A stretch of DNA of 63,997 nt, filler included, from Octopus bimaculoides (Eukaryota), in the NCBI RefSeq assembly GCF_001194135.2. It is 5 parts of 5 records of this genome, joined end to end, with 100 filler letters (N's around TTAATTAATTAA, not from the genome) between each part and the next. Parts side by side here need not be neighbours in the genome. Positions count along the whole stretch, not along the records: positions 1 to 17,853 come from NC_068987.1; 4 more parts are not named here. One strand, given 5' to 3'. Both the position numbers and the translations under genes were made by a program. Every line of letters begins with the position of its first letter. Positions within the stretch are counted from its first letter, which is position 1. Shown here in pieces: positions 15,073 to 16,376 of this stretch. The notes below the pieces were generated by a model, which was not told where the DNA came from, did not search any database, and saw nothing but the letters and a program-made list of their open reading frames with translations.

Positions 15073-15897
15073 ATGATAACCTCAAATTGTCAATGGCTTA
15101 CCAGAAGTAGGTCATTTGCTGTTTATATAATACGTTATCATTCTTCTATCAAGAACCCAGAAAATTTAATTTACATTCTACCAGACACCAACCCAGAGAA
15201 GATACCATTTATAAATCAATATCAACATATCTTTGATTTATCAAAATTCAACATTCCAAACTTAAAACAGACTTCAGCCAAACTGCGCCGACCAGAACTA
15301 AAAGTAGAAGACTCTCGCCTATTCTACACACCACAGTTGGCTCTTTCTTTTAATAATAATACTAGGCAACTAGATATTCAGTATTCAATACTGAGAAAAA
15401 TATTTGAGGTTATTTCTTTAATTTACCTTAAGAGTCCATTGTTGTTGCTAGACATTGGCTGTGGTACAGGTGTAAGTACCGAAAGTTTCACTTCAAACAA
15501 TTGCCATTTTATTGGCACTGACATGAGTATGTCAATGCTATCTATGGCAGTGAAAAAGAAGTCTTTGAAGAGTTGTGATTACCTCCAACTTGACCATAGT
15601 CACAGACTTCCCTTTCGCCCAAATTGTTTTGATGTTGTCATCAGTACTTCATTTTTACAGTGGTTATTAGTTACAAAAGATTCAAAATGCATTTTAGGAA
15701 GATTTTATTCTTTTGTTTCTCACATTTTAAAGCCCAATGGACATTTTTTGCTCCAGTTCTATCCAAGGAACATTTCAGATATTCAACTAGCCTTGACCTT
15801 ATCTGTAGATGTTTTCCGAGGAGCCTTGTTCTCTTGCAGACCACACCCTAAACGAGGACTGAAACTTTTCTTATTTCTCTATAAAGAAGATAAATAA
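15073..15897 (+). CDS. BUD23: BUD23/WBSCR22-family class I SAM-dependent methyltransferase (18S rRNA m7G MTase-like), uninterrupted 274-aa ORF
   Basis: Co-linear with BUD23/WBSCR22 as I recall it: RRPE..LFY, LLLDIGCGTG (motif I), GTDMS (vs GLDIS), LPFRPNCFDVVIS (vs IPFKPGTFDGCIS), FLQWL (vs AVQWL), LQFYP (vs LQLYP), KLFLFL (vs KKFYLCL). No stops or frameshifts; AATAAA at 15896-15901. It may be a paralog rather than the ortholog. Confidence 0.85.
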   Translation: MITSNCQWLTRSRSFAVYIIRYHSSIKNPENLIYILPDTNPEKIPFINQYQHIFDLSKFNIPNLKQTSAKLRRPELKVEDSRLFYTPQLALSFNNNTRQLDIQYSILRKIFEVISLIYLKSPLLLLDIGCGTGVSTESFTSNNCHFIGTDMSMSMLSMAVKKKSLKSCDYLQLDHSHRLPFRPNCFDVVISTSFLQWLLVTKDSKCILGRFYSFVSHILKPNGHFLLQFYPRNISDIQLALTLSVDVFRGALFSCRPHPKRGLKLFLFLYKEDK

Positions 15898-16376
15898 TAA
15901 ACATATTTTTAAAACATCAAAAATTGTTTGTTTGTCTTTTTTGTCATTGTTTTTACATCCATTGACACCAGGAAAGGTTTTTTTAAATAATTTCTGACAT
16001 TTGCATATTAGAGCAAAATCACTTTGACAGTTTTTCCTGTTGCTAACTACTTAAAAAGGATGGAACATGTCAAGCCAGCAAAACTCAAGCTCGCAAAGTT
16101 ATTGATCTTACTTAAGCATACTAAATATATGGAAGCTAGCATATGTTTTGAACTCATGACCCCAGTAGCAGAGAGGTGAGTCCACAGTTTGGTTTTAATT
16201 GCCAGTTGTACATAATCATACTTCACAAAATATGAACATCATAATTTTCTAATTTGATATCTGTTATTTCTGCAAAGTTAATGCCTCTGGAGGAAAAGAT
16301 GTGATCAGAATTGTGAATTCCTGTTTATATCTGTGTCTTTGTATAAAGATATGTGTATATCCATTTGTACATGCAC

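What the first reader, a model, noticed from the sequence alone, without database searches (positions are those of the whole stretch)
15073..15901. BUD23-family methyltransferase with a mitochondrial-presequence-like N-terminus and no C-terminal tail
Seen: an intact single-exon 274-aa ORF in which RRPE, which lies in the first ~10 residues of canonical BUD23/WBSCR22, is at residues 72-75. The first 29 residues (MITSNCQWLTRSRSFAVYIIRYHSSIKNP) have no D/E, three R plus one K, many S/T, and end in R-Y-H-S-S. The ORF stops right after the last MTase strand (KLFLFLYKEDK*), with AATAAA overlapping the stop. Established: BUD23 is a nuclear/nucleolar TRMT112-dependent 18S rRNA m7G methyltransferase with a ~75-aa basic C-terminal tail, and arginine-rich, acid-free N-termini are typical mitochondrial import signals. 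Inference: an intronless (probably retroposed) paralog that lost the nuclear tail and gained an import peptide, possibly a relocalised RNA methyltransferase. About 70 stop-free codons in DNA this AT-rich would be unlikely by chance (rough estimate below 1%).
Basis: partly seen in the sequence, partly recalled or inferred. Interest (0 to 1): 0.72.

Follow-up and report, generated by a model that had tools for sequence, protein, structure and literature searches.

The report
Old, tail-less BUD23 methyltransferase paralog
This octopus gene is an expressed, conserved second copy of the ribosomal-RNA methyltransferase BUD23, shared with other molluscs and at least one annelid. It lacks the nuclear tail and has its own N-terminal add-on, and whether it works in mitochondria is plausible but unproven.

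Summary
Window 15073-15897 (+) is an intact 274-aa ORF. Its residues 71-270 are a BUD23-type methyltransferase domain, RRPE sits at 72-75, there is no C-terminal WBS_methylT tail, and AATAAA overlaps the stop.

- The gene is not intronless. RNA contigs splice a 71-nt exon (12126-12196) to an acceptor at 14966. At least one more exon lies upstream of the window. In-frame stops before the ATG keep the whole CDS in the terminal exon. Transcripts end near 15920.
- It is not a recent cephalopod retrocopy. N-extended, tail-less orthologs with a single-exon or near-single-exon CDS occur in Argonauta, Patella, Haliotis, Mytilus, heterobranch gastropods and the annelid Owenia. These species or genera also keep a canonical BUD23. 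Octopus bimaculoides has one on another chromosome, with many introns and the tail.

Catalytic and SAM-binding residues are invariant, and dN/dS is 0.13-0.34.

Residues 30-71 are a conserved module that AlphaFold2 models confidently. Residues 1-29 evolve nearly neutrally.

Mitochondrial import is weakly supported. About 5% of random local stop-free translations share the leader's composition, and Mytilus lacks a leader. I put it near 40%.

I found no paper describing this family.

The parts
12126..12196 (+). 71-nt 5'UTR exon (second-to-last known exon), bounded by AG|...|GTAAGT. It contains a uATG at 12160.
   Evidence: RNA contigs of runs X1, X6 and X8, and 5 raw reads of X20, join 12196 to 14966. 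The exon and both splice sites are conserved in O. vulgaris and O. sinensis at 94.7% identity. A further upstream exon ending ...GTATGGAACCCAGTGAAGAATTCGTGGGAC is not in the window.
12197..14965 (+). 5'UTR intron (GT...AG). It holds a LINE/RT fragment and an assembly gap of N.
   Evidence: The RT ORFs and the N run are.
14966..15072 (+). 5'UTR part of the terminal exon. It follows the acceptor tttcag|TTATG, contains three uATGs, and has an in-frame TGA at 15052-15054.
   Evidence: Contigs of X1, X5, X6 and X8 all begin matching here, with the same upstream loose end. The in-frame stop is and the uATG list. The acceptor is conserved in three other octopod sequences.
15073..15159 (+). Residues 1-29: a fast-evolving, basic, acid-free leader and a candidate mitochondrial presequence (R21-Y-H|S24). 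It is modelled at low confidence.
   Evidence: dN/dS is 0.6-1.0 against Argonauta. pLDDT is below 50 for residues 1-24, with a predicted helix at 13-25.
15160..15285 (+). Residues 30-71: the family-specific N-terminal module (NLIYILPxT...IPF...FxIPNLK), absent from canonical BUD23.
   Evidence: dN/dS is about 0.22 against Argonauta. pLDDT is 94-97 for residues 31-60, with a strand at 32-35. A profile of this module hits only the tail-less family among 400 collected proteins. It has no relative in the PDB by sequence.
15286..15882 (+). Residues 72-270: BUD23-type class I SAM methyltransferase domain. It includes RRPE (15286-15297), motif I LDIGCGTG (15448-15471), D150, D174, ISTSFLQW and QFYP.
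   Evidence: phmmer against the PDB gives human BUD23 at 1e-22 and yeast Bud23 at 6e-22. Foldseek's top 8 hits are all BUD23, at E about 1e-17 and TM(target) 0.76-0.91. Key residues are invariant in 25 family and 22 canonical sequences.
15895..15901 (+). Stop codon TAA (15895-15897) overlapped by the poly(A) signal AATAAA (15896-15901).
   Evidence: Sequence.
15918..15923 (+). Transcript 3' end (probable cleavage/polyadenylation site).
   Evidence: Contigs end at 15918 (X5) and 15923 (X1). Raw-read depth is zero downstream.

Best explanation
The ORF encodes a functional member of an old, so far undescribed paralog family of BUD23, the 18S rRNA m7G1575/1639 methyltransferase.

Origin. The family arose before the mollusc-annelid split. 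Its coding sequence lies in a single exon in the five octopod sequences and in Haliotis, Patella and Mytilus, and residues 18-311 of 311 lie in one exon in Owenia. The canonical gene has many introns. This fits an ancient retroposition, but that step is inferred and not shown.

Gene structure in octopus. The CDS is the terminal exon of a spliced gene with at least two 5'UTR introns and several uATGs.

Likely chemistry. The protein keeps every SAM-binding and purine-pocket residue of BUD23, so it most likely transfers a methyl group from SAM to N7 of a guanine in a structured RNA. It keeps the three Trm112 hot-spot residues (D169, R182, D187), so it may still use TRMT112.

What changed. It has lost the basic C-terminal WBS_methylT tail. 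The sources read here describe that tail only as a basic C-terminal extension, and they tie Bud23-Trm112 to nucleolar pre-40S particles and to Dhr1/DHX37. That the tail itself mediates these ties is my recollection. In its place the protein carries a conserved, confidently folded 40-residue N-terminal module. I infer that this module redirects the enzyme to another substrate or partner.

Leader. The first ~29 residues are a poorly constrained basic leader. The leading single idea is a cleavable mitochondrial presequence, which would make this a mitochondrial RNA m7G methyltransferase, for example acting on the mt-SSU rRNA guanine homologous to G1575. I rate that at only about 0.4.

Shown: the ORF, its expression, splicing, 3' end, paralogy, purifying selection, and the fold and motifs.
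Inferred: activity, TRMT112 use, retroposition, localisation and substrate.
For: Homology and fold.
- BUD23 is the best PDB match by sequence and by predicted structure.

Paralogy.
- The canonical O. bimaculoides BUD23, P0339, is 281 aa with PF12589. It lies on CM046601.1, spans 20 kb and has at least 8 coding exons. It is 30% identical to the window protein.

Family.
- Full-length orthologs occur in O. vulgaris/sinensis, an unnamed octopod and Argonauta.
- N-extended tail-less relatives are named in Patella, Haliotis, Mytilus, Gigantopelta, Physella, Aplysia, Plakobranchus, Lymnaea and Owenia.
- Canonical BUD23 is named in the same species or genera.
- In an NJ tree the family is monophyletic with bootstrap 0.98.
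- The N-module profile is family-specific.
- The CDS is single-exon in Haliotis, Patella and Mytilus, and Owenia has residues 18-311 in one exon.

Selection.
- Omega is 0.17-0.34 overall, 0.13 for the MTase domain and 0.22 for residues 30-71, both against Argonauta.
- Catalytic residues are invariant and the Trm112 hot spots largely kept (with PMC4678810).

Expression and gene structure.
-.

Leader.
- It is net basic in most members, and a position-conserved [KR]-x-[FYH]-[ASC]-[ST]-[LIF] motif resembles an R-3 MPP cleavage site.
- TRMT112 itself is reported to enter human mitochondria (PMC13539109 abstract).
Against: - No activity, partner, substrate or localisation data exist.
- The leader evolves at omega near 1.
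- Its composition occurs in about 5% of random stop-free local translations.
- It is modelled at pLDDT below 50.
- Mytilus has only 4 residues before the conserved module, with an in-frame stop 39 nt upstream. Several other members have short leaders.
- Monophyly in the NJ tree could be inflated by long-branch attraction, because the family's branches are long.
- The Trm112 hot spots are relaxed in part of the family: D169 is kept in 16 of 25 sequences.
- Several uATGs precede the start codon, and its Kozak context is weak.
Confidence: 0.75

Rival explanations
1. One reading: a recent, intronless, retroposed cephalopod copy of BUD23 that lost the nuclear tail and newly gained a mitochondrial import peptide.
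For: - The CDS is a single exon while the parent gene has many introns.
- The tail is absent.
- The leader is basic and acid-free.
Against: - The gene is spliced, with 5'UTR exons.
- The same N-extended, tail-less architecture, with a single-exon or near-single-exon CDS, exists in gastropods, bivalves and an annelid.
- Identity to the octopus's own canonical BUD23 is only 30%.
- There is no poly(A) remnant. The only flanking repeat is a 12-nt imperfect direct repeat of the kind expected by chance.
Confidence: 0.03
2. Same enzyme family, but not mitochondrial. The first ~29 residues are an unconstrained N-terminal extension whose start codon has drifted. The enzyme acts in the cytosol or nucleus on a non-canonical RNA target, and the conserved basic N-module (residues 30-71) replaces the C-terminal tail as the RNA- or partner-binding element.
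For: - Omega is near 1 for residues 1-29.
- The leader's composition is close to a random AT-rich translation.
- Leader length ranges from 0-4 to 68 residues across the family, and Mytilus starts 4 residues before the module with an upstream in-frame stop.
- The Trm112 hot spots are kept, and Trm112's four long-known methyltransferase partners modify cytoplasmic translation components: 18S rRNA, tRNAs and eRF1 (PMC5372719).
Against: - Leaders are net positive (K+R 4-9 against D+E 0-2) in most complete members.
- They share a basic-x-aromatic-small motif at a fixed distance from the module.
- Presequences typically evolve fast.
- TRMT112 is reported to be imported into human mitochondria.
Confidence: 0.45
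3. The conserved N-terminal strand (residues 32-35) folds back onto the edge strand beta3 of the methyltransferase domain. It would act as a built-in substitute for TRMT112 and make the enzyme partner-independent.
For: - AlphaFold2 places a strand at 32-35 within a segment of pLDDT 94-97.
- Trm112 binds its partners through a beta-zipper on beta3 and covers a hydrophobic patch (PMC5372719).
- Hot spot 1 (D169) is relaxed in 9 of 25 family members.
Against: - No model coordinates were available, so the strand's partner is unknown.
- The octopus protein keeps all three Trm112 hot-spot residues.
- The N-module profile finds no Trm112 chain in the PDB, even at E up to 10.
Confidence: 0.1
4. A decaying or non-functional copy, that is, a transcribed pseudogene or a catalytically dead pseudo-enzyme.
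For: - Branches are long and identity to canonical BUD23 is low.
- uATGs precede the start codon and RNA depth is low.
Against: - The ORF is intact at 274-275 aa in five octopod sequences, and dS against Argonauta is above 1.
- Omega is 0.13-0.34.
- All SAM-binding and active-site residues are invariant across 25 family members.
Confidence: 0.03

Closest known systems
Canonical BUD23 / WBSCR22 (18S rRNA m7G1575/G1639 methyltransferase, TRMT112 partner)
   Same: - The class I methyltransferase fold matches (Foldseek E about 1e-17, TM to target up to 0.91).
- The RRPE lid, motif I (LDIGCGxG), D150, D174, ISxSxxQW and QxYP are all kept.
- The Trm112 hot-spot residues are kept in octopus.
   Different: - About 70 extra N-terminal residues: a variable leader plus a conserved 40-residue module.
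- No PF12589 basic C-terminal tail.
- A single-exon CDS, against at least 8 coding exons in the canonical gene.
- Only 30% identity to the same species' BUD23, and much longer branches.
- It coexists with canonical BUD23 in the same genomes.
Other Trm112-activated methyltransferases (Trm9/ALKBH8, Trm11/TRMT11, Mtq2/HEMK2)
   Same: Class I methyltransferases that use strand beta3 and conserved acidic and basic hot spots to bind Trm112. TRMT11-TRMT112 is now reported inside human mitochondria (PMC4678810; PMC13539109 abstract).
   Different: None appears among the sequence hits in the PDB search. Their substrates and active sites differ. A Trm112 partnership for the octopus protein is only inferred from three residues.
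Bacterial RsmG (16S rRNA m7G527) and animal mitochondrial SSU rRNA methyltransferases (TFB1M, NSUN4, METTL15)
   Same: If the mitochondrial reading is right, the job would be the same kind: base methylation of small-subunit rRNA of bacterial type.
   Different: No sequence relationship was detected. The NCBIfam scan gave only generic Methyltransf_11-type hits below their cut-offs, and no RsmG. From my own knowledge, not tested here, no m7G is known in animal mitochondrial rRNA.

Membership tests
BUD23/WBSCR22 (canonical ortholog) | Class I SAM methyltransferase domain most similar to BUD23, with its SAM-binding and purine-pocket motifs | tested here: met
   - phmmer against the PDB gives 1e-22 to human BUD23.
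- Foldseek's top 8 hits are all BUD23.
- The motif residues are invariant.
BUD23/WBSCR22 (canonical ortholog) | C-terminal basic extension (Pfam PF12589, WBS_methylT) | tested here: not met
   - The ORF stops 4 residues after the last strand.
- PF12589 is absent from the precomputed Pfam lists of the octopod proteins and present in nearly all canonical BUD23s listed.
BUD23/WBSCR22 (canonical ortholog) | RPE motif within the first ~10 residues (no N-terminal extension) | tested here: not met
   RRPE is at residues 72-75. In P0339 the RPE is at residues 6-8.
BUD23/WBSCR22 (canonical ortholog) | Orthology: the single BUD23 locus of the genome | tested here: not met
   - A separate canonical gene lies on CM046601.1.
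- The paralog family forms its own clade, with bootstrap 0.98.
BUD23/WBSCR22 (canonical ortholog) | Binds TRMT112 and makes m7G in 18S rRNA on pre-40S particles | not testable with these tools
   Only the three hot-spot residues could be checked. D169, R182 and D187 are kept in octopus and partly relaxed in the family.
Processed retrogene | Intron-less coding sequence while the parental gene has introns | tested here: met
   - The CDS is one exon in the five octopod sequences (four named species and one unnamed octopod) and in Haliotis, Patella and Mytilus. In Owenia residues 18-311 are in one exon.
- The canonical gene has at least 8 coding exons.
Processed retrogene | Poly(A) remnant and target-site duplications flanking the copy | tested here: inconclusive
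   - There is no A-run after the 3' end.
- The only flanking repeat is a 12-nt imperfect pair at 14878 and 15956, of chance size.
- Such marks would not be expected to survive since before the mollusc-annelid split.
   Orthologs occur in gastropods, bivalves and the annelid Owenia.
Proteins with a cleavable mitochondrial presequence | N-terminal 20-40 residues rich in R/K and S/T and poor in D/E | tested here: inconclusive
   - Met in octopus (4 K/R, 0 D/E, 7 S/T) and in most family members.
- But 5.3% of random local stop-free windows match the same criteria.
- Mytilus lacks a leader.
Proteins with a cleavable mitochondrial presequence | Amphipathic helix and an MPP cleavage motif (R-2 or R-3) | tested here: inconclusive
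   - A helix is predicted at residues 13-25, but at pLDDT below 50.
- The maximum hydrophobic moment is 0.49.
- R21-Y-H|S24 and the aligned K-x-[FY]|[AS]-S-L of other members resemble the R-3 motif, whose consensus I recall from memory.
Proteins with a cleavable mitochondrial presequence | Positive score in dedicated predictors, or demonstrated import | not testable with these tools
   No TargetP, MitoFates or DeepLoc was available, and there are no experimental data.

The most novel reading that the evidence does not exclude
Molluscs and annelids (Lophotrochozoa), and possibly more phyla, carry a dedicated mitochondrial m7G RNA methyltransferase derived from BUD23. It would be imported through its N-terminal leader. 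It would methylate the P-site guanine of mitochondrial SSU rRNA (the homolog of 18S G1575, E. coli G1338) or a mitochondrial tRNA, possibly together with imported TRMT112. To my knowledge no such modification is known in animal mitochondria.
Probability: 0.3. Interest if true: 0.7.

Novelty: new variant of a known kind. Interest (0 to 1): 0.5.

Why it matters
BUD23 is usually treated as a single-copy, universal eukaryotic ribosome-biogenesis factor. A second, long-lived copy with intact catalytic residues, no nuclear tail and its own N-terminal module implies an unrecognised m7G target in a large animal clade. That target could be mitochondrial or cytosolic.

The family is easy to test: localisation, TRMT112 binding and m7G mapping in mussel, abalone or octopus. 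Databases currently mislabel it as '18S rRNA (guanine-N7)-methyltransferase', 'bud23-like', 'uncharacterized' or even '7SK snRNA methylphosphate capping enzyme'. Sorting this out would improve annotation of mollusc and annelid genomes.

Tried and rejected
1. Only BUD23 in the genome: rejected. A canonical P0339 locus was found.
2. Splicing into the ORF, or onward to a C-terminal exon: rejected. There are no joints within 14600-16250 in contigs or raw reads, and depth is zero after about 15884-15923. One X8 contig carries 36 unrelated letters after 15878. That sequence is absent from all fetched loci and from the other runs, so I treat it as an assembly chimera.
3. Upstream exons extending the CDS: rejected by the in-frame TGA at 15052-15054.
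4. A real upstream 87-aa cistron, as called in O. sinensis locus L004: unlikely. Its C-terminus differs between O. bimaculoides and O. vulgaris, and the 71-nt exon diverges at the neutral rate.
5. N-module homologous to Trm112 or to anything solved: the profile search found no PDB hit better than E = 0.48.
6. NCBIfam scan: only generic methyltransferase hits below their cut-offs.
7. Rfam and tRNA scans of the window: nothing.
8. Synteny between Argonauta and Octopus flanks: only transposon ORFs are shared.
9. Retrocopy hallmarks: none convincing.
10. Literature: no paper on a BUD23 paralog or retrogene, or on mollusc mitochondrial m7G.
11. The word-indexed homolog search with the family profile added only two further family proteins (P0156 and P0024). 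The unindexed representative search was what revealed the family.
12. Taxon names for the deeper family members (P0014, P0020, P0024, P0044) could not be obtained.
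Full report
**Source and observation.**
The window is Octopus bimaculoides assembly GCA_001194135.2, chromosome CM046607.1, near 41.8 Mb.
- RRPE is at residues 72-75.
- The first 29 residues have 3 R, 1 K, no D/E and 7 S/T.
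- The stop TAA (15895-15897) is overlapped by AATAAA (15896-15901).
- From the local base composition, the chance of 71 open codons is about 0.009 and of 274 about 1e-8.

**What the protein is.**
- phmmer against PDB sequences puts human BUD23 (7wtw_q/6g4w_q, E about 1e-22) and yeast Bud23 (4qtt_B, 6e-22) far ahead of any other methyltransferase (next best 2.5e-6). Query residues 71-270 align to chain residues 3-205.
- An AlphaFold2 model built on a 17-sequence family alignment has mean pLDDT 85 and pTM 0.85. Its eight best Foldseek matches in the PDB are all BUD23 chains (E about 1e-17, TM normalised to target 0.76-0.91, rmsd 2.2-2.5 Å). They lead other methyltransferases by seven orders of magnitude.
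- The precomputed Pfam lists for the octopod orthologs contain only generic Methyltransf families. Nearly all canonical BUD23s listed also carry PF12589, the WBS_methylT C-terminal domain.
- The ORF ends four residues after the last strand of the fold.

**Gene structure and expression.**
Thirteen runs labelled as RNA from the same organism hold the ORF.
- Logan contigs of runs X1, X5, X6 and X8 all start matching the genome at 14966, just after tttcag. They carry the same unmatched upstream sequence.
- That sequence is the end of a 71-nt exon at 12126-12196, flanked by AG and GTAAGT. Five raw reads of the 2026 RNA-seq run X20 cross the same junction.
- The contigs continue upstream into another exon that is not in the window. 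So the gene has at least three exons, and its start lies beyond the window's left edge.
- Between the acceptor and the ATG there is an in-frame TGA (15052-15054), so upstream exons cannot extend the protein. M1 is the only in-frame ATG before residue 151.
- The known leader contains four uATGs, and the start context is weak (ccaATGa).
- Contigs end at 15918-15923. Three raw-read runs show no joints inside 14900-16100 and zero depth past about 15884.

So the CDS is a single exon, the gene is not intronless, and no C-terminal exon is spliced on.

The 5'UTR exon and both acceptors are conserved in O. vulgaris and O. sinensis. The 14966 acceptor is also conserved in a third octopod. An 87-aa gene call upstream in O. 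sinensis corresponds to a uORF whose end differs between species, so it is probably not a real cistron.

**It is a paralog, and an old one.**
- O. bimaculoides has a canonical BUD23 (P0339). It is 281 aa with PF12589, lies on CM046601.1, spans 20.2 kb and has at least eight coding exons. It is 30% identical to the window protein over residues 69-270.
- Full-length orthologs of the window protein (274-275 aa, single ORF) exist in O. vulgaris/sinensis (96%), an unnamed octopod (88%) and Argonauta hians (65%).
- The unindexed search of 1.8 billion representatives then showed about 25 more distant proteins. They align from query residue ~20-36 to ~270 and end there, so they share both the N-terminal extension and the missing tail.
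- Those with names come from Patella, Haliotis, Mytilus, Gigantopelta, Physella, Aplysia, Plakobranchus, Lymnaea and the annelid Owenia.
- Canonical BUD23 is also named in Mytilus trossulus, Haliotis cracherodii, Owenia, Lymnaea, Physella, Plakobranchus, Gigantopelta and Patella vulgata.
- In an NJ tree of the methyltransferase core (194 columns), the 25 N-extended proteins form one clade in 98% of 200 bootstraps. A four-sequence clade made of the two octopods and two unnamed sequences has 89%. Branches are long, so long-branch attraction is a caveat.
- A profile of the N-terminal module alone hits only these proteins among 400 collected.
- The CDS is a single exon in Haliotis, Patella and Mytilus. 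In Owenia residues 18-311 lie in one exon.
- In Patella, Mytilus and Haliotis the gene sits head-to-head with a histidyl-tRNA synthetase gene 3.6-4.6 kb away.

The duplication therefore predates the mollusc-annelid split. An ancient retroposition fits the intron pattern but cannot be shown. No poly(A) remnant or convincing target-site duplication remains.

**Constraint and likely chemistry.**
Nei-Gojobori dN/dS is 0.17-0.34 over the whole protein. Against Argonauta (dS above 1) it is 0.13 for the methyltransferase domain, 0.22 for residues 30-71, and 0.6-1.0 for residues 1-29.

Across 25 family and 22 canonical sequences the following residues are invariant or nearly so: E75, D127, G129, G131, D150, S191, W197, Q228, Y230 and K264.

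The three Bud23 residues that form the electrostatic hot spots with Trm112 are D94, R107 and D112 (PMC4678810). They correspond to D169, R182 and D187. All three are kept in octopus. In the family they are kept in 16/25, 23/25 (R or K) and 21/25 sequences, against 21-22/22 in canonical BUD23.

I infer an active SAM-dependent guanine-N7 RNA methyltransferase that may still pair with TRMT112.

**The N-terminal extension has two parts.**
- Residues 31-60 are modelled at pLDDT 94-97, with a strand at 32-35, and are conserved (xxYxLPxT...F...LKGG..RRPE). This looks like part of the mature enzyme. It has no sequence relative in the PDB.
- Residues 1-24 are modelled below pLDDT 50, with a tentative helix at 13-25.

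Because the basic C-terminal tail is gone, I infer that the N-module takes over substrate or partner recognition. The reviews read here say that Bud23-Trm112 joins pre-ribosomes in the nucleolus and binds Dhr1 (PMC5372719). That the tail itself mediates this is my recollection, not something I read here.

**Is the leader a mitochondrial presequence?**

For:
- Most complete family members have 27-46 residues before the module, with K+R of 4-9 and D+E of 0-2.
- Cephalopod-like and heterobranch sequences share a basic-x-aromatic-small-Ser-aliphatic motif at a fixed distance from the module (R-Y-H-S-S-I in octopus, K-H-F-A-S-L in heterobranchs). This resembles the R-3 cleavage motif of the mitochondrial processing peptidase. 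The consensus is from memory.
- TRMT112 is reported to be imported into human mitochondria (PMC13539109 abstract).

Against:
- The leader evolves neutrally.
- 25% of stop-free 29-codon windows in this AT-rich window have no D/E, and 5.3% also have at least 4 K/R.
- Mytilus starts four residues before the module, with an in-frame stop 39 nt upstream.
- Lymnaea and several unnamed members have short leaders.
- No targeting predictor could be run.

I put mitochondrial import at about 0.4 and a non-mitochondrial role at about 0.45. The idea that strand 32-35 replaces TRMT112 in cis could not be tested, because model coordinates are not exposed. I give it about 0.1.

**Comparison with the known, and novelty.**
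The protein works like BUD23 chemically but fails three membership tests for the canonical ortholog: tail, N-terminal position of RPE, and orthology. Databases label it inconsistently: '18S rRNA (guanine1575-N7)-methyltransferase', 'bud23-like', 'uncharacterized', and in Aplysia '7SK snRNA methylphosphate capping enzyme'. Five full-text searches found no description of such a paralog.

I class it as a new variant of a known kind and rate interest at about 0.5. The gene is real, conserved and uncharacterised.

Noticed in passing
window 5934-8519 and 12692-13600: Two copies of the same LINE-like element, with endonuclease/reverse-transcriptase ORFs. The second copy lies inside the 5'UTR intron of the gene and runs into an assembly gap of N (about 13600-14090). 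Related RT ORFs also occur in the Argonauta locus.
   Followed up: partly
window 14226-14477 and 16620-17853: RNA contig depth is thousands-fold higher than over the gene. SINE-like repeat copies lie at 16797-16928, 17225-17356 and 17738-17850, with an inverted copy at 16394-16452. These produce many spurious 'joints' in read laying.
   Followed up: partly
window 17808: A>G in RNA contigs of all four runs laid, at more than half of the depth. The site lies in a high-copy repeat, so it may reflect other repeat copies rather than A-to-I editing. No variant sites were seen within the ORF at the available depth.
   Followed up: no
window 12160-15033; L004 1-9909: The spliced 5' leader carries uATGs at 12160 and 14968 (in frame with the main ORF but terminated), at about 15015 (out of frame, overlapping the start) and at about 15043. 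O. sinensis has an 87-aa gene call ending about 92 nt before the ATG. It corresponds to a leader ORF whose C-terminus is not conserved between octopus species.
   Followed up: partly
L007 1-2368, L009 1-1737, L006 about 1316-1390: In Patella, Mytilus and Haliotis the paralog sits head-to-head with a histidyl-tRNA synthetase gene 3.6-4.6 kb upstream, which suggests an old bidirectional pair. No such gene was seen within the octopus window or in the Owenia locus.
   Followed up: partly
L002 13212-20825: In Argonauta hians an ArsA/GET3-type ATPase gene starts 2.4 kb downstream of the paralog. No counterpart lies within 10 kb downstream in O. bimaculoides or O. vulgaris.
   Followed up: partly
family proteins P0016, P0017, P0019, P0022, P0029, P0047, P0086 (heterobranch gastropods and unnamed relatives): These members carry a 15-100-residue low-complexity insertion between the helix after strand beta2 and strand beta3. 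The Aplysia protein is annotated '7SK snRNA methylphosphate capping enzyme', probably a misannotation.
   Followed up: no
window 15878: One RNA contig of run X8 leaves the genome after 15878 and continues with 36 unrelated letters (GAAGCATCAGTTGTGGTGTGCAAGAAAGAC...). These are absent from all fetched loci and not seen in the other runs, so this is probably an assembly chimera.
   Followed up: yes
window 2229-2871: A (TG/TA/CA)-rich microsatellite-like stretch gives long spurious ORFs on both strands, with 'YIYIYI' and 'HTHTH' translations.
   Followed up: no
window 14878-14889 and 15956-15967: A 12-nt imperfect direct repeat (CATTCATTGACA / CATCCATTGACA) flanks the ORF-bearing exon. It is of chance size and is not taken as a target-site duplication.
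   Followed up: yes
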